IMG/VR virus record: IMGVR_UViG_3300032245_001746
Location: 255,858-319,857 of that record
Strand: one strand, 5' to 3'
DNA length: 64,000 nucleotides
In this document: piece after piece, positions 1 through 25,491 of the stretch
Numbering within the stretch: the first letter of the stretch is position 1
Layout of the letters: every line of letters begins with the position of its first letter
Notes under the pieces: model-generated
Database searches by the model: none
Seen by the model: only the letters and a program-made list of their open reading frames with translations
What the model was told of the DNA's origin: nothing
Translations under genes and position numbers: made by a program

Positions 1-6
1 TCAAAA

Positions 7-288
7 TTGTTAGATGAAATAGTAAATGATAATTCTAAAATTTTTACAGTTAAAAAAACATTCTCTGGAAAAAATCCAAATGTTGAAATAACATATAATG
101 GATTCGAACCATGTCACCTTTACTGGAATGTTATTTCAAAAGATAAATTCCAATTCTTCTACTTCGAACCAGATCAAACTATTATCTTTTCCTTCAAAGA
201 AATGATGCCAGATACACCTTGTATCCTTCTTAAAAAAGAATCAAAAGACTACATTCTCATCGAATTGTCAAACATCACTTTACCTTGA
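7..288 (+). CDS. Hypothetical protein (may be 5'-partial)
   Basis: ORF at window edge, no motif recognised. Confidence 0.6.
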   Translation: MLDEIVNDNSKIFTVKKTFSGKNPNVEITYNGFEPCHLYWNVISKDKFQFFYFEPDQTIIFSFKEMMPDTPCILLKKESKDYILIELSNITLP

Positions 289-298
289 TAAAAACTGA

Positions 299-307
299 TG
301 GTATAAT
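299..307 (+). promoter_or_regulatory. Canonical extended -10 promoter (TGGTATAAT)
   Basis: TGnTATAAT about 40 nt upstream of ORF 344. Confidence 0.5.
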
Positions 308-343
308 CTAAAATCAAAACAAACTATTTTAGAAAATATTAAC

Positions 344-769
344 ATGATAATAGGGTATAAAGGAACTTACAATTTCACTTGTCTTAGTCATAAATATGAA
401 ATTGGTAAATCTTATGAATTACCATACCATCCAATTCCTCGTCAATATGGATTTCATTATTGTAAAAATCCAAAACATGTTTTAGGTTATTATAATATCA
501 CACCTGATTTCAAATTAATTGAAATTGAAGATCTAAGTAAAGACACAAAAACAGAATACGATAAACGTGTAACAAATAAATTGCGTGTTATTAGAGAAGT
601 TTTAATAGAAGAATATTGTAAATTATTTAATCAACAAATTGAAATTAATGGAAATCAAGTTAAAATCACACGCCCAAATGGATCATGGAATATATGTGAA
701 TATCATAATAATATGATAATTAACTATGAAGATTCAAATAAAATAGTCCGTAAATATAAAAGAATATAA
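344..769 (+). CDS. Family B protein (GYKGTY..C..GFHYC..P..VL.YY..IEIEDL..TNKLRVIRE; DUF7666-like)
   Basis: Shares motifs with 8 minus-strand paralogs. Confidence 0.85.
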   Translation: MIIGYKGTYNFTCLSHKYEIGKSYELPYHPIPRQYGFHYCKNPKHVLGYYNITPDFKLIEIEDLSKDTKTEYDKRVTNKLRVIREVLIEEYCKLFNQQIEINGNQVKITRPNGSWNICEYHNNMIINYEDSNKIVRKYKRI

Positions 770-771
770 TT

Positions 772-1101
772 ATGCTATCAAATATGTCAACCTATATGGT
801 AATATGTATTTTTATTATCGGAATAATAAAAATTGTTTGTAAAAACAAATGCTATATGGATCTAGGTTTCTTCGAATTAGATGAAGAATTTAAAAAAGAA
901 CATGAACTTCAAGAAAATATTTACTTCTTCTCCTGTTTAACAATGTACATTCTAGCTTTAATGCAATTATTCATGGTAATTCTTACAAGTATATCTCAAT
1001 TGTTTTTAATAATAATAATCGTTACAATATTCTATGTGAGAAATCAAGAAAATTTTAAAAAGGAAACTACAAATGAACCACCCAGCAATAATAATACTTA
1101 A
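772..1101 (+). CDS. Hypothetical membrane protein
   Basis: Hydrophobic segments. Confidence 0.7.
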   Translation: MLSNMSTYMVICIFIIGIIKIVCKNKCYMDLGFFELDEEFKKEHELQENIYFFSCLTMYILALMQLFMVILTSISQLFLIIIIVTIFYVRNQENFKKETTNEPPSNNNT

Positions 1102-1333
1102 TGCATTACTAAATGGACAAGAAATCAAAACAAATAATATGACATACGTCATGAGTAATGATGATCAATTTGGAGTAAAAGTAATAGATGAATCTGGAGA
1201 AGAATGCGTAATGATCACAGATTACTCCATTAATTGGCTACTTAAATTCGCTAATTCACTAACTCCAGATGAAATCACACTCATTGCAGCAAACACAGCA
1301 TTTAATAAAGTAAAATTCAATGAGTCCAGATGA
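1073..1333 (+). CDS. Hypothetical protein
   Basis: RBS AAGGA, coupled ORF. Confidence 0.75.
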   Translation: MNHPAIIILNALLNGQEIKTNNMTYVMSNDDQFGVKVIDESGEECVMITDYSINWLLKFANSLTPDEITLIAANTAFNKVKFNESR

Positions 1334-1562
1334 TTTGTTAGCATATCTAGCCGCTAAACCTAAAAAAGAAAAACCAACTCTCGCAAAATCAGATAAATCC
1401 ATGTTAAAAGCATGGATCTATCTAAGAAATAATAAATACTTTATTAATGATGTTTTATGCAGACATGGTCTTTCAAGTTGCTATCAAATTGATGAAATCG
1501 AACATGAACACGCTATCGCAAATGCATGGAGCCATATATCAGATTATCTAGCTAATATTTGA
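1320..1562 (+). CDS. Hypothetical protein; last + strand gene, converges on glf
   Basis: Overlaps upstream stop. Confidence 0.7.
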   Translation: MSPDDLLAYLAAKPKKEKPTLAKSDKSMLKAWIYLRNNKYFINDVLCRHGLSSCYQIDEIEHEHAIANAWSHISDYLANI

Positions 1563-2641
1563 CTTAAATCTTTTAACGCCATTCCAAATACAGCATCCAT
1601 ATCTAAATACTTATAACTACCTAATCTGCCTCCAAATAATACATTGTCAGATTTACTCTTTTCATAATACTTTTTATATAATTCCTGATTTCTAACACTA
1701 TTTACAGGATAATATCTCTCTCCACCTAATTTATACTCAATAGGATATTCCTCAGTTATTATCGTATGTTTTAAATTTAAATTATTAACAAAATGCTTAT
1801 GCTCAATCACACGTGTATAAGGAATGTTTATGTCTGTATAATTAACCTGAGCTATCCCCTGATAATCACTAATTTCATGACGATACTCTTTAAAATTTAA
1901 ACTTCTATATTCTAAAAAACCATAACAATAATTATAATATTCGTCTATACTTCCACTGTATATCAAATTCTTAGCTATTGATTTCCAGTTTAAATCAAAC
2001 TCTTCACCTAATTTAACCTCAATACCATCCAACAATCTACTAAATATATTGGTATAACTTCCATTCATTGGTATTCCACTATACTTTGAATTATGATAAT
2101 GATCATTATCGTTATATCTAATTGGTAATCTTTTACCTATAGAACAAGGAATATTACTGCAACTCGTTCCCCACTGCTTCTCAGAATATCCCTTGTAAAA
2201 TTTTAAATATATCTCCTCACCTAATTCATTTAATACATGTTTCTCTAAATTATCCACTTTATCAAAATGTTTTTTTCTTAATTTTAATTCATTTAATACT
2301 TCTTCTTCATTATTACAACCCCATAATTGATTAAATGTTTTTAAATTTATAGGAAAACTGTAAATCTCGCCCTTATAATTTACTTTCACTTTGTGATTAT
2401 AATTATTTATAGGATATATTGAATTCACATATTCCCAAATTTTATCAGAATTAGTATTAAATATATGAGGTCCATATTTATGAACCTCTATTCCATCTAC
2501 ACTCTCAGTATAACAATTACCACCTATATGACACCTTCTATCAATTACCAAACAACTCTTACCAACTTTAGTTAACTCATATGCAAGTACACTTCCATAT
2601 ATTCCACTGCCCACAATCATATAATCATACATGCTTACCAC
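1544..2641 (-). CDS. glf: UDP-galactopyranose mutase
   Basis: N-terminal GxGxxG FAD motif, HIGGNCY, HKYGPHIF, YTRVIEHKHF, RYYPVN, GRLGSYKYLDMD; 365 aa. Confidence 0.95.
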   Translation of the reverse strand: MVSMYDYMIVGSGIYGSVLAYELTKVGKSCLVIDRRCHIGGNCYTESVDGIEVHKYGPHIFNTNSDKIWEYVNSIYPINNYNHKVKVNYKGEIYSFPINLKTFNQLWGCNNEEEVLNELKLRKKHFDKVDNLEKHVLNELGEEIYLKFYKGYSEKQWGTSCSNIPCSIGKRLPIRYNDNDHYHNSKYSGIPMNGSYTNIFSRLLDGIEVKLGEEFDLNWKSIAKNLIYSGSIDEYYNYCYGFLEYRSLNFKEYRHEISDYQGIAQVNYTDINIPYTRVIEHKHFVNNLNLKHTIITEEYPIEYKLGGERYYPVNSVRNQELYKKYYEKSKSDNVLFGGRLGSYKYLDMDAVFGMALKDLSQILAR

Positions 2642-3302
2642 CTAATAAATTAATTAATCTTAATTTTATATTATCAAAATTGTCCTCTTTATTTAATACA
2701 ATATACTCATCATTATAGTCTATTGATAAAAAATTAAACATTTTATTGATATTTTTCTTATTAATTAATTCATCATAATCGAGAATTATAAAATATCGCT
2801 CTCCTATGCCATATAAATAATTCTTCCATAAATTATCAAAATAACATACTTGATGATAACACTGTATCAACGAATAATCTCCATTTAATCTTTTATTAAT
2901 GTACATAGATACACTTTGATCTATAATGTTTCTTTTCATTACAATGTATTTTTCAACATCATAATTATTATAATCAAAACAACTTATCATTAACGTTATA
3001 TTGTTGTAATTATATTCACATAATTCATTACTTGTTAATCTGGATAAAAAAGGCACACCAGATATTAATTCATAATATTGAATAAAATTCAATTGTAAAT
3101 TATTGGGCGAATTTGATTTAAAATCATTTATATTCTTGTAAAGATAACACCATTTGCCAAAAGCAATATTGTTGATGTTATTATAGCCGCTTACAACTTC
3201 CTTGTTCTTATGAATAAAATTATTGTATTTATTTGTACTATTTAACAAATTACTGACTTCATTGCCACCATCATAATCATTTGATAATATCCAACAACTC
3301 AT
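2625..3302 (-). CDS. Putative sulfotransferase-like (Stf0-type) protein, divergent
   Basis: KYIVMKRNIIDQSVS and LDYDEL resemble the R..L.QAVS / YEDL motifs; the 5' PAPS loop is not clear. Confidence 0.4.
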   Translation of the reverse strand: MSCWILSNDYDGGNEVSNLLNSTNKYNNFIHKNKEVVSGYNNINNIAFGKWCYLYKNINDFKSNSPNNLQLNFIQYYELISGVPFLSRLTSNELCEYNYNNITLMISCFDYNNYDVEKYIVMKRNIIDQSVSMYINKRLNGDYSLIQCYHQVCYFDNLWKNYLYGIGERYFIILDYDELINKKNINKMFNFLSIDYNDEYIVLNKEDNFDNIKLRLINLLGGKHV

Positions 3303-3317
3303 AATAATTATATAGTA

Positions 3318-3509
3318 CTATTTGCTCCAAAAATCAGGATCTGCTCGCCTCGCAACCCTTAATCCTATTAATCTTTGACAATTATTAATTGATGAAAAAA
3401 AATCATTTATATTAGATTCTTTAGTCTCTAACAAAAGATACTTATCCCATGCATCAACCAATAAACTTAAAATTTCTTTTTCTTTATCCGTTAAACGCAC
3501 ATCACTCAT
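3318..3509 (-). CDS. Hypothetical protein
   Basis: Coupled ORF in operon. Confidence 0.7.
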   Translation of the reverse strand: MSDVRLTDKEKEILSLLVDAWDKYLLLETKESNINDFFSSINNCQRLIGLRVARRADPDFWSK

Positions 3510-4144
3510 TCAGAATATCTCCTAACTGTACTAATAAATGCTTCTAAAGCCGTTAAATCAATGTTTTCATCATTCTTGCAAATAGAACTGGATAACATAA
3601 AAATATCTGCATCATATATGTAATCAACAACATTAACAAAATCTAATCCACTAGCAATTGCTAATATATGAGAACCCAAGTATTCTCTCATTTCCCTTAT
3701 CTTCTTAATCTCAGGAGCAAAACCAGTAGATGGTCCACTTGTAGTTACTACATTCATACTTGTAATTGCCGCTTCACACGCACCCTTTAAATCTTTCTCA
3801 ATCGGCTGATACTTAAATGCTACTCCACCAAAATATAAACCATCATATTTAAAACTATCAAATAAATTAAATGCCTGATCTGTCCATAATCCATCCAAAA
3901 ATAACAAATCACCTAAATCATCAACCGCTCTCACACTCAAATCATTAATTCCTAACCAATAATCAGGAAATAATCTTCTACACTCTTTAGCAATTGTTAT
4001 TAACTCTTCTCTGGAAATTACATGATTAATTAAAAAACATCCATCTGCACCCGCAGATATACACGTATTAATGTTTCTAATCGCTTGATCCAAACTCTCA
4101 ACATGAATTACTGGCAACACAGCTTTTATATTAAATTCTTTCAT
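3506..4144 (-). CDS. BtpA/SgcQ-like TIM-barrel protein
   Basis: LPVIHV, AGADGCFLIN, VAFKYQ, VVTTSGPSTG, AIASG motifs. Confidence 0.7.
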   Translation of the reverse strand: MKEFNIKAVLPVIHVESLDQAIRNINTCISAGADGCFLINHVISREELITIAKECRRLFPDYWLGINDLSVRAVDDLGDLLFLDGLWTDQAFNLFDSFKYDGLYFGGVAFKYQPIEKDLKGACEAAITSMNVVTTSGPSTGFAPEIKKIREMREYLGSHILAIASGLDFVNVVDYIYDADIFMLSSSICKNDENIDLTALEAFISTVRRYSE

Positions 4145-4154
4145 AATATTCTTT

Positions 4155-4472
4155 CTAAAATTTGTCCCAAACTTTTAACGCAACATCATCAGAATCATAA
4201 TCTCCATAATGCATAACTATTTCATAACGCAAACCACATTTATTACAACAATGATTACTTGCTCTAATCCAATTCTTACATCTAGGACAAAATTCCCTCA
4301 CCCATAATGGTATACTTATTACAAATAATGCATATATCCCAAATAATACTAAAAATATAGTTGTAATTATATTTATCGCATTTTTAAGTGTTAATAATGC
4401 AATTATAGTTAATGGCAAATGAATTATAAAAACAACTATTAATGCAAATAAAAATGATTTTTTCCAACTCAT
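4155..4472 (-). CDS. Membrane protein with C-terminal zinc ribbon
   Basis: Two TM segments then CPRC..CCNKC. Confidence 0.7.
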   Translation of the reverse strand: MSWKKSFLFALIVVFIIHLPLTIIALLTLKNAINIITTIFLVLFGIYALFVISIPLWVREFCPRCKNWIRASNHCCNKCGLRYEIVMHYGDYDSDDVALKVWDKF

Positions 4473-4544
4473 ACTCTACCTTTTATAATTTGTTTAAAAC
4501 AATAATAACAAATACATAACATTAATATAATTGCAATTATATCC

Positions 4545-4889
4545 TTAATTATATTCATCTTCTTTGTCTTCCTCTACTTGTTTAAAAGTCATTGTATTAA
4601 AATCTAATTCAAAAAATTTAATAGGCTCCCAATTATTGCCATAATTTAACCTCTCCAACAAATTCTCCTTTATCTCACTATCACGCTGAATAGTAGAACC
4701 TAATAACTCAATACAAACATTATTCTTAGAAACTCCAAATCTAACCTTGCGATTATATAATGATTTATTTAATACACTCTTATCAGATGGTTTAAATACA
4801 AAGTTATCTAAAATAACACCAAGAATAAATCCCAAAATTAAAAATATAATGAATATTACAAATAAATTAAATTGAAAATTAGCAAACAT
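4545..4889 (-). CDS. Hypothetical membrane protein
   Basis: N-terminal TM helix. Confidence 0.7.
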   Translation of the reverse strand: MFANFQFNLFVIFIIFLILGFILGVILDNFVFKPSDKSVLNKSLYNRKVRFGVSKNNVCIELLGSTIQRDSEIKENLLERLNYGNNWEPIKFFELDFNTMTFKQVEEDKEDEYN

Positions 4890-4892
4890 AAA

Positions 4893-5171
4893 TTAATAAT
4901 ACCTCTTAATCTCTTTCAAAGTGACTAAATTATCTAAATATTCAATTTTAATTTTAATAAAACCTTGACATAACTCTTTTTTAACAAAATTAATTACATC
5001 AAACAAATTATAAAAAATTCTAGTAGTTATAATCTTATATGGATCAACCTCTTTAAGAGTTTCCCAAATTGGAAAAAACAATAAATACCAAGGATTAATC
5101 CTTTTATATATTATATAATAAGGCTCAAACTCTTCATCTCTAAATTGTATTATACTATATGTTGGAAACAC
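4893..5171 (-). CDS. Hypothetical protein
   Basis: First ORF after the TGGTATAAT promoter. Confidence 0.65.
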   Translation of the reverse strand: MFPTYSIIQFRDEEFEPYYIIYKRINPWYLLFFPIWETLKEVDPYKIITTRIFYNLFDVINFVKKELCQGFIKIKIEYLDNLVTLKEIKRYY

Positions 5172-5197
5172 AGTATTGCTCCTTTTAAAAAAACATT

Positions 5198-5206
5198 CTA
5201 TTATAC
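5198..5206 (-). promoter_or_regulatory. Canonical extended -10 promoter (TGGTATAAT) for the leftward AT-rich operon
   Basis: + strand attatacca upstream of ORF 4893-5171. Confidence 0.5.
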
Positions 5207-5551
5207 CAGCATGGAACCAAAAGTGTAATGAAATTACTGCAAATTACTTAATAAAAAATTTTGTAACAATTTTTTTGTAATACCCCCATGTTAATTTTAA
5301 CTCATTTACCTATTACAGATTATGTTATAATTAATCATTAAACAATTTTGTAACAATTAATAATTAAATTTGAGTTGAAAACCCTACAAAATAAAAAACA
5401 ATTTTTAATTGAAAATAAAATGACCGGGTGATAGCTGGTAAGAGGGGTATGCCCTACCAAACTTTTTTAAAGTTTTTTCAAATTAATTTCTTTATTTTTA
5501 ATTTTGCAACAATTTATTGTACAATCAAACTTCCTGTTAAGAAAATGTTAA

Positions 5552-6686: not shown

Positions 6687-6756
6687 TTGTTTTCTCCTGT
6701 TGTTTGTTTCTCGTATCGTTGTATTGTACAATCAAACTTGTTGATTTGTGAATAAA

Positions 6757-6787
6757 AAAACGGGGATAATTTAATTATCCCCGTTTT
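6757..6787 (-). terminator. Intrinsic terminator
   Basis: AAAACGGGGATAAT/ATTATCCCCGTTTT stem with U-tract. Confidence 0.85.
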
Positions 6788-6869
6788 ACAACACGACTAC
6801 GTATGGAACATTTATGTCAGCTTAAAGCTGCGTTTTGTTTTTGGGTCCAATCGAGTCGGGTGTTGTATC
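6787..6869 (-). ncRNA. Candidate small structured RNA, copy A
   Basis: ORF-free promoter-to-terminator unit, near-identical to 10359-10441, ends base-pair. Confidence 0.65.
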
Positions 6870-7783: not shown

Positions 7784-7861
7784 TTGCTCATTCCGTTTTG
7801 TTTGGGGCTGATATCGATATCGGTTCATTGTACAATCAAAATTCATTGATTAAGTACAAGA

Positions 7862-7899
7862 GAAAACGGCAAAGATGGCGTACATCCCTACCGTTTTTC
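7862..7899 (-). terminator. Intrinsic terminator
   Basis: AAAACGG...CCGTTTT imperfect stem. Confidence 0.65.
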
Positions 7900-7922
7900 A
7901 GTTCTAAAGTTTGGGAGCTTGA

Positions 7923-7994
7923 TCAAACTGAAGAACGATTTCGATTTCGAATTTTTCGCAGGACGATTCCTGTCAGCAGGAACAATGAAATCAT
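7923..7994 (-). CDS. 23-aa hydrophobic/basic peptide MISLFLLTGIVLRKIRNRNRSSV
   Basis: GGAG RBS, own promoter at 8033; below ORF-track cutoff. Confidence 0.55.
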   Translation of the reverse strand: MISLFLLTGIVLRKIRNRNRSSV

Positions 7995-8065
7995 TTGTTT
8001 ACTCCGTTCGGGTGAAGGGCTGATACGGTTACATTGTACAATCAAACTTAATTAATTAAGTATAA

Positions 8066-8104
8066 GAAAAAACGAATGAGGTTCTTACTCTCATTCGTTT
8101 TTTC
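8066..8104 (-). terminator. Intrinsic terminator
   Basis: GAAAAAACGAATGAG/CTCATTCGTTTTTTC. Confidence 0.85.
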
Positions 8105-8266
8105 TTTTTTTCATAGAGGAGACTATGCGGCGTAGATTAGTCTCTCAGCACTCTTATTTCCCTGCAACATTTGGGTTGACCATCACCAAAATTAGGTCTT
8201 GTTGTTTAAGTACAACAAGCAAAACTAATTATTTTGTAGTACATCAACTCATTGTACAATCAAACT

Positions 8267-8458: not shown

Positions 8459-8517
8459 GTTTGTTTCCTTCTGACATCGTCATATTGTACAATCAAACTT
8501 CATTGATTAAGTATAAG

Positions 8518-8547
8518 AAAAAACAGGAATGTTTCATTCCTGTTTTT
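8518..8547 (-). terminator. Intrinsic terminator
   Basis: AAAAACAGGAATG/CATTCCTGTTTTT. Confidence 0.85.
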
Positions 8548-8652
8548 AGCGATTTTTGGATAAAATTAGTGTTTTACTCGTTACTTATACAGTAGTATAT
8601 ACTAACGTGGTATACCTTTGTATAAGAACATCGCCAAACGCTCTACACTAAT
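8548..8652 (-). ncRNA. Candidate pseudoknotted RNA motif, copy 1 of 3
   Basis: Conserved with 24954-25039 and 25529-25606, with covarying stems. Confidence 0.7.
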
Positions 8653-8696
8653 CCAGCTTTATCAATACCCTAAAGCTGGAAATCGGGATAAATTAG

Positions 8697-9983: not shown

Positions 9984-10048
9984 GATTGTTCTCTTTGAGA
10001 TTGTGATATCACTACATTGTACAATCAAACTTCATTGATTAAGTACGA

Positions 10049-10084
10049 CAAAAAATGCATGGATTTATTTCCATGCATTTTTTG
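10049..10084 (-). terminator. Intrinsic terminator
   Basis: CAAAAAATGCATGGA/TCCATGCATTTTTTG. Confidence 0.85.
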
Positions 10085-10326
10085 TTTTTCAATATAGGAG
10101 AAGAAATCAGATTTCAGGGGGAGCACGATTATTAATCATGGATGTGTCCAATATTGGATCGGGCTGCGGCGAATATTAGAGATGAAAAGAAAGAAATTTA
10201 TGTTTTAGGTCATGTCCTCATGGTAGTTTCTCCTTGACTAGTGGTTTTTGTTTTAGTTAAGTTTAACTTTTCTAACGTTCGTTGCATCGCAACATTGTAC
10301 AATCAAACTTCATTGATTAAGTACAT

Positions 10327-10359
10327 AAAAAAACAGAGATAAATTAATATCTCTGTTTT
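10327..10359 (-). terminator. Intrinsic terminator
   Basis: AAAACAGAGAT/ATCTCTGTTTT. Confidence 0.85.
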
Positions 10360-10441
10360 ACAACACGACTACGTATGGAACATTTATGTCAGCTTATTTG
10401 CTGGTATTGTTTTTGGGTCCAATCGAGTCGGGTGTTGTATC
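10359..10441 (-). ncRNA. Candidate small structured RNA, copy B
   Basis: Duplicate of 6787-6869 with its own promoter and terminator. Confidence 0.65.
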
Positions 10442-11180: not shown

Positions 11181-11366
11181 GGCAGTAACCCTTTCAGAAT
11201 TGTTTTTGACTTGTCAACACCGTTGTTGACATCGTCATATTGTACAATCAAACTTCAAAGCCCTTCTCAACTTAGAGAAGGAAGTTTGACCTGACTCTTC
11301 CGAGTCATCTTTGAGTCATCCTTATGAGGAATCATTGTACAATCAAACTTAATTGATTTAAGGAAT

Positions 11367-11397
11367 AAAAAAAGCAGAGATGTATTATCTCTGCTTT
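11367..11397 (-). terminator. Intrinsic terminator after tRNA-Arg
   Basis: AAAGCAGAGAT/ATCTCTGCTTT. Confidence 0.85.
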
Positions 11398-11405
11398 ATA
11401 ATAAA

Positions 11406-11479
11406 TGTCCCCATCAGGGATCGAACCTGAAACCTACTGCTTAGAAGGCAGTTGCTCTATCCAATTGAGCTACGAGGAC
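11406..11479 (-). tRNA. tRNA-Arg(UCU), no CCA
   Basis: ACTGC-CTTCTAA-GCAGT anticodon arm; GTCCTCG/TGGGGAC acceptor. Confidence 0.92.
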
Positions 11480-11483
11480 AAAA

Positions 11484-11623
11484 GAAACAGACCGATTCAG
11501 CATTTCACTATCAATCAGGTGATACGCCCTTACTGGAACTGATATCCAATATTGAATATCAAAAGACGTTTTAAAGTGAAATTTTTTATTAATCCAGTTT
11601 ATCAGAATTGCTCAGTCTGTTTC
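11484..11623 (-). ncRNA. Candidate multi-stem RNA co-transcribed ahead of tRNA-Arg
   Basis: Nested stems plus a 7-bp pseudoknot, no ORF. Confidence 0.55.
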
Positions 11624-11646
11624 TAACTTCAAATTGTACAATCAAA

Positions 11647-11895
11647 CTATGCTGCGAGTCCAATTCGTTGATTCAATGAATTGAAGACACTTTCAACAAG
11701 TTGCTGTCCTGGAATCGGAAGATATTGCAACGTGAGAAGTCCATCGGTTTCAAGATCAAAAACAGACCCTACGTCTTCCATTTTGAATTCATAGGATTTC
11801 TGATTTGTGCATCTGACATAAAGTTCAACTCCTTTTTCAAAGGAAAGAAGTTTTGAACTTGTAGAATCATTTGTCAACAGAACGAAAAAAAACAT
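11647..11895 (-). CDS. Hypothetical protein
   Basis: AAGGA RBS; stop overlaps the repeat. Confidence 0.75.
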   Translation of the reverse strand: MFFFVLLTNDSTSSKLLSFEKGVELYVRCTNQKSYEFKMEDVGSVFDLETDGLLTLQYLPIPGQQLVESVFNSLNQRIGLAA

Positions 11896-24151: not shown

Positions 24152-24242
24152 GATTTTTATCTCAAATGGACTATAACAGAATTGAACTGTTTCTAATCAC
24201 TATTATCGTGATCGTGCTCCGTACACTAATAATCCAGAGTTT

Positions 24243-25285: not shown

Positions 25286-25320
25286 TTCTCACAATCCTTC
25301 ATTGTACAATCAAACTTCAT

Positions 25321-25445
25321 GAAGTTGAACAATTAACTAATTACCTAATAAAAGTGGCACAATTCTAATTAAATAAGTTGTACTAGGCAGATATTTTGTA
25401 CCTATTAGGTAATCCACCCTGATAATTAGTTAGTTGCTCAAACTC
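25321..25445 (-). ncRNA. Candidate rod-shaped small RNA
   Basis: ORF-free unit between two repeats; long irregular hairpin. Confidence 0.5.
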
Positions 25446-25491
25446 ACAATTCTCGTATTGTACAATCAAACTTCATTAGAAGTAAATAAAT

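What the first reader, a model, noticed from the sequence alone, without database searches (positions are those of the whole stretch)
11484..11623. 140-nt multi-stem, pseudoknotted RNA co-transcribed immediately upstream of tRNA-Arg(UCU)
Seen (given as + strand arms): GAAACAGAC/GTCTGTTTC closes the unit; nested AGCA/TGCT, TGATA/TATCA and ACTGGA/TCCAGT; hairpin TGATAT-CAAT/ATTG-ATATCA; and a crossing 7-bp pair TTTCACT/AGTGAAA. It starts about 10 nt after the promoter and ends 4 nt before the tRNA. Other tRNAs here have leaders of only about 5 nt. Inference: an independent ncRNA released by RNase P cleavage of the tRNA, or a regulator of tRNA maturation.
Basis: partly seen in the sequence, partly recalled or inferred. 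Interest (0 to 1): 0.6.

Follow-up and report, generated by a model that had tools for sequence, protein, structure and literature searches.

The report
Structured small RNA preceding phage tRNA-Arg
A 140-nt folded, non-coding RNA lies between an early promoter and a tRNA-Arg gene of an uncultured giant phage, its few close relatives keep it with compensating base changes, and it is probably a small RNA cut free when the tRNA is processed, though its job is unknown.

Summary
The RNA folds better than all 200 shuffles (z -3.8). It sits in a single unit: phage promoter motif, 9 nt, leader, UUUU, tRNA-Arg(UCU), terminator.

The window is the end of a 320-kb IMG/VR phage record. Close relatives from ENA, Logan, JGI and NCBI assemblies all carry the leader, in three sequence variants. 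All five substitutions in the most distant variant fall in the closing helix and keep it paired, two of them as double compensatory changes. The hairpin tip holds a 22-nt insert predicted to extend the hairpin. The interior never varies.

In those relatives the tRNA-Arg(UCU) behind the leader is a different allele (about 75% identical), usually followed by an HNH homing endonuclease. The leader is therefore a separate module from the tRNA. More distant relatives have tRNA-Arg(UCU) without it.

There is no Rfam family, no paralogue, no likeness to T4 rnaC/rnaD and no ORF. The pseudoknot is plausible (shuffle p about 0.006) but cannot be tested by covariation.

Best reading: one of several early small-RNA genes in this phage, released by RNase P at the tRNA 5' end. 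Its function is unknown and no transcript evidence was obtained.

The parts
11633..11647 (-). Phage-specific promoter-like motif GTTTGATTGTACAAT. It is one of 69 identical, co-oriented copies. The predicted transcription start is about 11624-11627.
   Evidence: the start site is inferred from the usual 7-nt spacing after a -10-like TACAAT
11484..11623 (-). The 140-nt structured leader RNA (nt 1 = 11623, nt 140 = 11484).
   Evidence: no ORF longer than 20 codons in the unit; no Rfam family
11613..11623 (-). P1 5' arm (nt 1-11). It pairs with 11484-11494 and can extend by one pair (11624 with U 11483).
   Evidence: two double compensatory changes (A-U to G-C, G-C to A-U) and two wobble-compatible changes among three variants
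11484..11494 (-). P1 3' arm (nt 130-140), followed directly by the U run.
11610..11612 (-). P1b 5' arm (nt 12-14). It pairs with 11499-11501 across a 4-nt bulge.
   Evidence: MFE; invariant, so untested
11575..11582 (-). P2 5' arm (nt 42-49, AUUUCACU). It pairs with 11502-11509.
   Evidence: invariant
11562..11569 (-). P3 5' arm (nt 55-62). It pairs with 11524-11531. It contains three G-U pairs that are possible only on the minus-strand RNA.
   Evidence: invariant
11540..11561 (-). P4 hairpin (nt 63-84).
   Evidence: U-G to U-A change. The tip carries a 1-nt insert or a 22-nt insert in relatives, and the 22-nt insert is predicted to extend the hairpin.
11510..11523 (-). P5 small hairpin (nt 101-114).
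   Evidence: MFE only; invariant
11593..11598 (-). Candidate pseudoknot arm ACUGGA (nt 26-31). It is complementary to UCCAGU at 11532-11537 (nt 87-92), which lies in an MFE internal loop.
   Evidence: shuffle p about 0.006, post hoc; invariant, so there is no covariation test
11480..11483 (-). U4 spacer between P1 and the tRNA 5' end (U7-U8 in relatives). The predicted RNase P site is 11479/11480.
   Evidence: the cleavage site is inferred from the tRNA model boundaries
11406..11479 (-). tRNA-Arg(UCU), with no encoded CCA.
11371..11397 (-). Intrinsic terminator hairpin plus U7 that closes the unit. It is shared with the relatives and lies outside the swapped tRNA/HNH cassette.

Best explanation
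The leader is a phage small-RNA gene. It specifies a compact, structured RNA of about 145 nt. It is transcribed from one of the phage's many identical promoter-like motifs as a dicistronic precursor with tRNA-Arg(UCU). Host RNase P cleavage at the tRNA 5' end would release it, with its 5' and 3' ends locked together in an 11-12 bp helix (P1) and a short 3' U tail. The helix needs only to pair, whereas the interior is constrained in sequence. That pattern fits an RNA that binds a specific partner, either a protein or another RNA, rather than a passive spacer. The link to the tRNA is modular. The tRNA, with or without an HNH homing endonuclease, is an exchangeable cassette sitting between the RNA body and the shared terminator, and it serves at most as the 3'-end processing signal.

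Shown: the anatomy, the conservation, the P1 and hairpin covariation, and the modularity.

Inferred: transcription, RNase P release, stability and action in trans. The partner and the biological role are unknown.
For: **Unit anatomy.**
- The unit runs promoter motif, leader, tRNA, terminator.
- The fold has z -3.84, and all variants give the same MFE topology.

**Conservation and covariation.**
- Three leader variants come from samples held in four archives.
- In the most distant variant, all 5 substitutions lie in P1 and keep it paired. The other 118 interior nt have none, although neighbouring ORFs differ by 7-15%.
- G-U pairs exist only on the transcribed strand, and the minus strand folds better than the plus strand.
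- The 22-nt insert at the hairpin tip is predicted to extend the hairpin.

**Modularity.**
- The tRNA allele behind the leader differs, at about 75% identity over the part that aligns.
- Precursors of both alleles fold as two separate domains.

**Non-coding context.**
- The unit has no ORF longer than 20 codons.
- At least 7 further promoter-bounded ORF-less structured units lie in the window, most of them nearby at 6.7-11.4 kb. Five of them also occur in the relatives. One lies directly behind tRNA-Lys in the same unit.
- T4 gives a precedent for stable small RNAs of 119-139 nt in one cluster with tRNA-Arg and a homing endonuclease.
Against: - There is no transcript evidence. RNA-library contigs cover the locus but cannot show ends, strand or level.
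- Only three closely related variants exist, so P2, P3, P5 and the pseudoknot have no covariation support.
- Other non-coding DNA around the cassette is equally conserved (98% downstream), so recent recombination could explain part of the interior invariance.
- P1 followed by U4-U8 could instead act in cis as a terminator or attenuator.
- No target was found by complementarity within the phage genome.
- More distant relatives manage without the element.
Confidence: 0.5

Rival explanations
1. Cis-acting leader. The folded domain controls how much tRNA-Arg is made, and in relatives also how much of the downstream HNH endonuclease. P1 plus the U run would act as a conditional terminator (an attenuator or riboswitch-like device), or the domain would shape or delay RNase P processing or the stability of the precursor.
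For: The 3' arm of P1 is followed at once by U4 (window) or U7-U8 (relatives). The architecture resembles an aptamer: a multi-helix core with an invariant interior, closed by a P1 that covaries. No separate promoter serves the tRNA.
Against: The P1 arms are about 120 nt apart, unlike the compact hairpins that end every neighbouring unit. The U run varies from 4 to 8. No alternative anti-terminator pairing was seen. No riboswitch or T-box family matches. Three other tRNAs in the same region are expressed with almost no leader, and the tRNA body is exchangeable.
Confidence: 0.2
2. Incidental linkage. A stand-alone small-RNA gene (promoter, body, terminator, like its neighbours) was split from its terminator when a mobile tRNA-Arg(UCU)/HNH cassette inserted. 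The RNA is functional, but its position before a tRNA has no meaning.
For: The swapped segment is exactly the tRNA (with or without HNH), lying between the leader's U run and the shared terminator. HNH relatives at 54-59% identity sit right behind tRNA-Arg(UCU) in unrelated contigs that lack the leader. Neighbouring non-coding units are promoter-plus-terminator cassettes.
Against: Every locus found with the leader also has a tRNA-Arg(UCU) behind it. No leader-plus-terminator locus without a tRNA was found. This reading explains the origin rather than the function, and it is compatible with the best explanation.
Confidence: 0.15
3. No RNA function. The element would be a spacer, a decayed gene, or a DNA-level element such as a protein-binding inverted repeat or a recombination or homing flank. 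Its conservation would reflect recent gene conversion around the tRNA/HNH cassette.
For: Identity to the most distant variant rises toward the cassette on both sides: 85-89% in outer ORFs, 93% in the adjacent ORF, 96% in the leader, 98% downstream. The plus strand also folds well, z -3.3.
Against: Five of five substitutions fall in the 22-24 nt of P1 and all preserve pairing, including two double changes. Wobble pairs exist only on the transcribed strand. Inserts are tolerated only at a hairpin tip, and the larger one is predicted to extend the hairpin.
Confidence: 0.1
4. Self-cleaving ribozyme that trims the precursor next to the tRNA. This would resemble the HDV-like ribozymes that flank some phage tRNAs (from my own knowledge of the field).
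For: The RNA is compact and possibly pseudoknotted, has an invariant core, and abuts a tRNA.
Against: No ribozyme family matches. The best hit is Hammerhead HH10 at 14 bits against a gathering score of 75, E = 4. Known classes that flank tRNAs cut at their own 5' end and lie 3' of the tRNA.
Confidence: 0.03

Closest known systems
Phage T4 small stable RNAs rnaC (species 1, 139 nt) and rnaD (species 2, 119 nt)
   Same: These are phage RNAs of the same size and unknown function. They lie in one transcription cluster with tRNA-Arg(UCU), and a homing endonuclease gene (segB) is next to that tRNA. They come from a tRNA-containing precursor (established T4 knowledge).
   Different: The T4 RNAs lie downstream of tRNA-Arg, not upstream. 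rnaC carries a T-arm-like GGTTCGAATCC segment that the leader lacks. Local alignment scores to the leader are no better than shuffles.
GOLLD and ROOL RNAs
   Same: These are structured non-coding RNAs often found beside tRNA genes in phages and prophages. Their authors suggest the proximity may reflect co-transcription (PMC5737381).
   Different: By my recollection they are several hundred nt long and widespread across bacteria. The leader is 140 nt, matches no Rfam family, and is confined to one narrow phage clade.
Functional RNAs cut out of tRNA precursors (E. coli 3'ETS-leuZ sponge; tRNA-linked small RNAs such as MALAT1/mascRNA or herpesvirus tRNA-miRNA units). From my own knowledge, not tested here.
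   Same: A tRNA fold serves as the processing signal that defines the end of a neighbouring functional RNA.
   Different: Those RNAs are short unstructured spacers, or they are released by RNase Z or RNase E at the tRNA 3' side. Here a large folded domain would be released at the tRNA 5' side by RNase P.
Riboswitch aptamers
   Same: The architecture is shared: a multi-helix core closed by a covarying P1, an invariant interior, a possible pseudoknot, and a U run after P1.
   Different: No family matches. The downstream gene is a tRNA. No expression platform or alternative pairing was found.

Membership tests
Any Rfam 15 family | Score at or above the family's gathering threshold | tested here: not met
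   Only tRNAs pass in the window. With E up to 10 on 11350-11680, the sole hit inside the leader is Hammerhead HH10 at 14.2 bits against a threshold of 75.
T4 rnaC / rnaD | Sequence similarity to the T4 RNAs | tested here: not met
   Local alignment scores of 14 and 15 against shuffle means of 15.5 and 14.7.
T4 rnaC / rnaD | tRNA-like T-arm at the 3' part (seen in rnaC) | tested here: not met
   The tRNA model finds nothing in the leader even at E up to 10, and the leader has no GGTTCGA-type loop.
T4 rnaC / rnaD | Co-transcription with a tRNA cluster and release by tRNA-processing enzymes | not testable with these tools
   The layout fits: one promoter, one terminator. The available RNA-run data were contigs only.
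Intrinsic terminator / attenuator | Compact G+C-rich hairpin immediately followed by a U run | tested here: inconclusive
   A U4-U8 run follows P1, but the P1 arms are about 120 nt apart and the scan does not call it.
Y RNA / YrlA with Ro (Rsr) | Rfam YrlA match and a TROVE-domain protein in the genome | tested here: not met
   No Rfam match. No TROVE hit in the 320-kb record, which is estimated 63% complete.
   A 6-bp perfect complement links two MFE-unpaired stretches, shuffle p about 0.006. All 12 positions are invariant in the three variants.
Protein-coding gene / leader peptide | Conserved ORF with a start codon | tested here: not met
   The longest ORF in the unit is 20 codons; by my reading of the sequence it runs from the leader into the tRNA. 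The alleles diverge downstream of the leader.

The most novel reading that the evidence does not exclude
The leader is a new aptamer-type sensor. A ligand- or protein-stabilised P1, backed by the U run, would decide whether the polymerase reads on into tRNA-Arg(UCU), and in relatives into the HNH homing endonuclease. That would be a riboswitch-like gate on a phage tRNA gene.
Probability: 0.07. Interest if true: 0.8.

Novelty: new variant of a known kind. Interest (0 to 1): 0.4.

Why it matters
Large phages carry many tRNAs, and a few (T4, and phages with GOLLD or ROOL) carry unexplained structured RNAs beside them. This element is small, well delimited and structurally constrained, and its ends would be defined by the promoter and by RNase P, so it is easy to synthesise and probe. 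It sits in an early region that appears packed with similar promoter-to-terminator non-coding units. That suggests this phage group deploys several small RNAs, which may be worth studying as a set. The locus also shows a tRNA gene behaving as an exchangeable cassette together with a homing endonuclease. The element is rare, with three near-identical variants, and has no demonstrated function, so its immediate reach is modest.

Tried and rejected
**Searches for relatives of the leader.**
- GenBank phages by blastn matched only the tRNA.
- Eight IMG/VR scans found no leader. The one 19-mer hit was chance.
- One metagenome scan and one genome scan each returned the known variant plus a chance hit.
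- The flanking 136-aa protein led only to a paralogue elsewhere in the same phages.

**More distant phages.**
- Those sharing a 576-aa protein (G001-G005) or the promoter motif (G006) have tRNA-Arg(UCU) without the leader.

**Covariance model R1.**
- R1 was run over 618 kb: the whole own genome, G006 and other loci.
- It found only the known copies. The best extra hit (25.7 bits) lies across two ORFs and is rejected.

**Other tests.**
- HNH homologues were followed into other contigs. They have a tRNA-Arg in front but no leader.
- T4 rnaC/rnaD show no similarity.
- No Ro/TROVE partner was found.
- Antisense targets in the phage genome were sought. The longest complement is 14 nt, the same as for shuffled leaders.

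**Misleading first reading, corrected.**
- Read laying first suggested that the tRNA is 'replaced by 765 letters' in relatives.
- Reading the contigs showed this to be another tRNA-Arg(UCU) allele plus an HNH gene.

**Expression.**
- The RNA-library run gave contigs only, so it carries no evidence of expression.

- Read laying was given 4,001 letters.
- No alternative genetic code was used.

Full report
**Where we are.** The window is the last 64 kb of a 319,857-bp IMG/VR virus record, estimated 63% complete. It is a tailed jumbo phage: it has a tape-measure protein and a topoisomerase II, 20 tRNA genes and a tmRNA-like gene called by ARAGORN, and a CCA-adding-enzyme-family ORF. From window position 5.5 kb to 61.8 kb almost all genes lie on the minus strand. 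The 15-mer GTTTGATTGTACAAT occurs 69 times exactly, always in that orientation, and nowhere else in the record. It contains a -10-like TACAAT and precedes most short genes, so I treat it as the promoter of this region. Calling the region 'early' is my inference from its terminal position and its many short genes.

**The observation.**
- tRNA-Arg(UCU) lies on the minus strand at 11406-11479.
- Upstream of it, one copy of the motif ends at 11633. Nine nt later the 140-nt element starts at 11623. It ends at 11484, and UUUU separates it from the tRNA.
- A canonical terminator at 11397-11371 follows the tRNA.
- The minus-strand RNA folds to -37.3 kcal/mol, z -3.84, with no shuffle of 200 as good. 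The plus strand is weaker, -30.8 kcal/mol, z -3.28.
- Three other tRNAs start 10-11 nt after a motif copy, so the long leader is peculiar to tRNA-Arg. Three further tRNAs follow ORFs.
- The unit has no ORF longer than 20 codons.

**Fold.** The MFE has the same topology in all variants.
- P1 pairs nt 1-11 with nt 130-140 and continues, after a 4-nt bulge, as a 3-bp P1b.
- P2 is AUUUCACU/AGUGAAAU.
- P3 is 8 bp and includes three G-U pairs.
- P4 is a 9-bp hairpin.
- P5 is a small hairpin.
- Shuffling the joining region gives an equally long match to any unpaired loop in 0.6% of trials. That is suggestive, but the test was made post hoc.

**Relatives.**
- GenBank phages and IMG/VR hold no copy of the leader.
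- The Logan index showed near-identical sequence in wastewater, river and freshwater runs.
- Laying contigs on the locus showed conserved flanks, with the tRNA 'replaced'.
- Through the 82-aa upstream ORF I fetched 13 loci from ENA, Logan, JGI and NCBI assemblies. Two more came from the metagenome and genome scans.
- All of them carry motif, leader and a tRNA-Arg(UCU), but the tRNA is a different allele, about 75% identical over the part that aligns.
- In most loci the tRNA is followed by a strong hairpin and a 207-aa HNH homing endonuclease (PHROG 2255, E = 1e-29). One locus, L036, keeps only a remnant of that gene.
- Homology to the window resumes exactly at the terminator. The exchangeable unit is therefore the tRNA, with or without HNH. 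The leader and the terminator are the constant frame.

**Evidence for structure.** There are three distinct leader sequences.
- In the most distant variant all five substitutions lie in P1. A3G pairs with U138C, G7A pairs with C134U, and G131A turns U-G into U-A. In addition, the base before nt 1 changes from A to G opposite U141.
- The hairpin tip carries a 22-nt insert that is predicted to extend the hairpin.
- The nearer variant has G78A (U-G to U-A in P4), G131A, one change in an unpaired stretch, and one extra loop base.
- In the formal count, 100% of 150 cells are paired, two pairs show double changes, and three show one-sided compatible changes. With the 3' partners slid by 1-3 columns, only 37-43% of cells pair.
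- With three sequences the shuffle statistics carry little weight. The placement of changes does matter: none in 118 interior nt, while the adjacent ORFs differ by 7-15%.
- Caveat: non-coding DNA on the other side of the cassette is 98% identical too, and identity rises toward the cassette. Recent recombination may therefore contribute to the interior invariance.
- The G-U pairs and the energy difference between strands argue for an RNA-level structure on the transcribed strand rather than a DNA-level one.

**Limits of distribution.**
- Phages sharing a 576-aa protein at 37-48% identity, and one IMG/VR record that shares the promoter motif (11 copies, 31 tRNAs), have tRNA-Arg(UCU) in other contexts without the leader.
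- Covariance model R1 found no paralogue or distant homologue in 618 kb, which included the whole own genome. The best extra hit lies inside ORFs.
- HNH relatives at 54-59% identity sit right behind tRNA-Arg(UCU) in unrelated contigs, again without the leader.

**Context that bears on function.**
- Besides this unit, at least seven further promoter-bounded units in the window have no ORF above 32 codons and fold with z from -3.6 to -6.7. Six lie at 6.7-11.4 kb and one at 25.3 kb. Part of each z-score comes from the terminator hairpin.
- Two of these units are paralogues with compensatory changes in the terminator stem.
- One lies directly behind tRNA-Lys within the same unit.
- Five of the seven are found in the relatives at 86-99% identity.
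- G+C is raised at 6-12 kb.
- The Arg leader is therefore one of a set of probable small-RNA genes. It differs from the others only in having a tRNA between its body and the terminator.
- Precursors of both alleles fold as two independent domains.

**Mechanism.** I commit, at about 0.5, to the following reading. The element is a small RNA transcribed with the tRNA and released by RNase P at 11479/11480. P1 locks both of its ends together, and the invariant interior binds an unknown partner. The anatomy, conservation and modularity are shown. Transcription, cleavage, stability and action in trans are inferred.

Rivals:
- A cis-acting attenuator built from P1 plus the U run (0.2).
- Incidental linkage after insertion of a mobile tRNA/HNH cassette into a stand-alone small-RNA gene (0.15). 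This explains origin rather than function and is compatible with the main reading.
- No RNA function, with conservation due to gene conversion (0.1).
- A self-cleaving ribozyme (0.03).

**Comparison with known systems.**
- The nearest parallel is T4. There tRNA-Arg, the stable RNAs rnaD (119 nt) and rnaC (139 nt), and the homing endonuclease segB are neighbours. The order differs, rnaC is partly tRNA-like, and there is no sequence similarity to the leader.
- GOLLD and ROOL RNAs are also found near tRNAs in phages, possibly because they are co-transcribed (PMC5737381). They are far larger and do not match.
- No Rfam family matches.
- No Ro-type protein is encoded in the record.
- No antisense target stands out in the phage genome.

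**Verdict.** Its independence from the tRNA is supported. The pseudoknot, RNase P release and function remain open. It is a new variant of a known kind, namely phage small RNAs linked to tRNA genes. It is rare and narrowly distributed. Interest is 0.4.

Noticed in passing
window 5516-61808 (genome 261,373-317,651): There are 69 exact, co-oriented copies of GTTTGATTGTACAAT on the minus strand. The extended logo is AAGTTTGATTGTACAAT, with a weak GATAT 6-10 nt downstream. The copies occur only in the terminal 58 kb of the record and precede most short genes. This looks like a phage-specific promoter class. The IMG/VR record 3300032245_001763 shares it (11 copies), while relatives at 37-48% protein identity do not.
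   Followed up: partly
window 11254-11327, 10309-10440, 6738-6868, 10031-10287, 8499-8695, 8048-8244, 7842-8026, 25316-25450 (all minus strand): These promoter-bounded units have no ORF above 32 codons and fold with z from -3.6 to -6.7. Most end in a terminator hairpin. 10309-10440 and 6738-6868 are paralogues with compensatory changes in the terminator stem. 8499-8695 follows tRNA-Lys in the same unit. Five of them occur in the relatives at 86-99% identity, and none matches Rfam. They are probably a battery of phage small RNAs.
   Followed up: partly
L025 5577-6200 and the equivalent in L026-L035, L037; L142 3001-3630; L146 1209-1844; L145 3001-3624: A 207-aa HNH homing endonuclease sits directly behind tRNA-Arg(UCU) in the relatives, and L036 keeps only a remnant. 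Homologues at 54-59% identity are also directly behind tRNA-Arg(UCU) in unrelated contigs, and behind tRNA-Ala in one at 52% identity. The window phage has a different tRNA-Arg allele and no HNH gene, as if the tRNA allele and the endonuclease travel together.
   Followed up: partly
relatives, e.g. L028 about 3775-3825, between tRNA-Arg and the HNH start codon: A perfect inverted repeat of roughly 15 bp ends a few nt before the ATG of the HNH gene. It may limit endonuclease expression.
   Followed up: no
window 24166-24236 (minus strand): ARAGORN calls a 71-nt tRNA-Leu(taa) here that the Rfam tRNA model does not report at gathering score. It may be a degenerate tRNA.
   Followed up: no
genome 29,678-30,043; 82.6-84.9 kb; 246.7-247.2 kb (outside the window): There is a tmRNA-like gene (tag GETVRLAA), a second cluster of 13 tRNAs on the plus strand, and an ORF of the PolyA_pol / CCA-adding enzyme family. 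The ORF fits the fact that the window's tRNA-Arg lacks an encoded CCA.
   Followed up: no
window 1-5500: G+C is lower here (0.27-0.29), strands are mixed, and no promoter motif occurs. The region includes a UDP-galactopyranose mutase homologue at 1544-2641 (Pfam GLF, E = 2e-63). The motif-bearing region starts abruptly at about 5.5 kb.
   Followed up: no
L100 513-590 (G006): Directly after a copy of the promoter motif lies a tRNA-like sequence with a T-arm-like GGTTCGAATCC and a CAT anticodon-like loop. ARAGORN did not call it.
   Followed up: no
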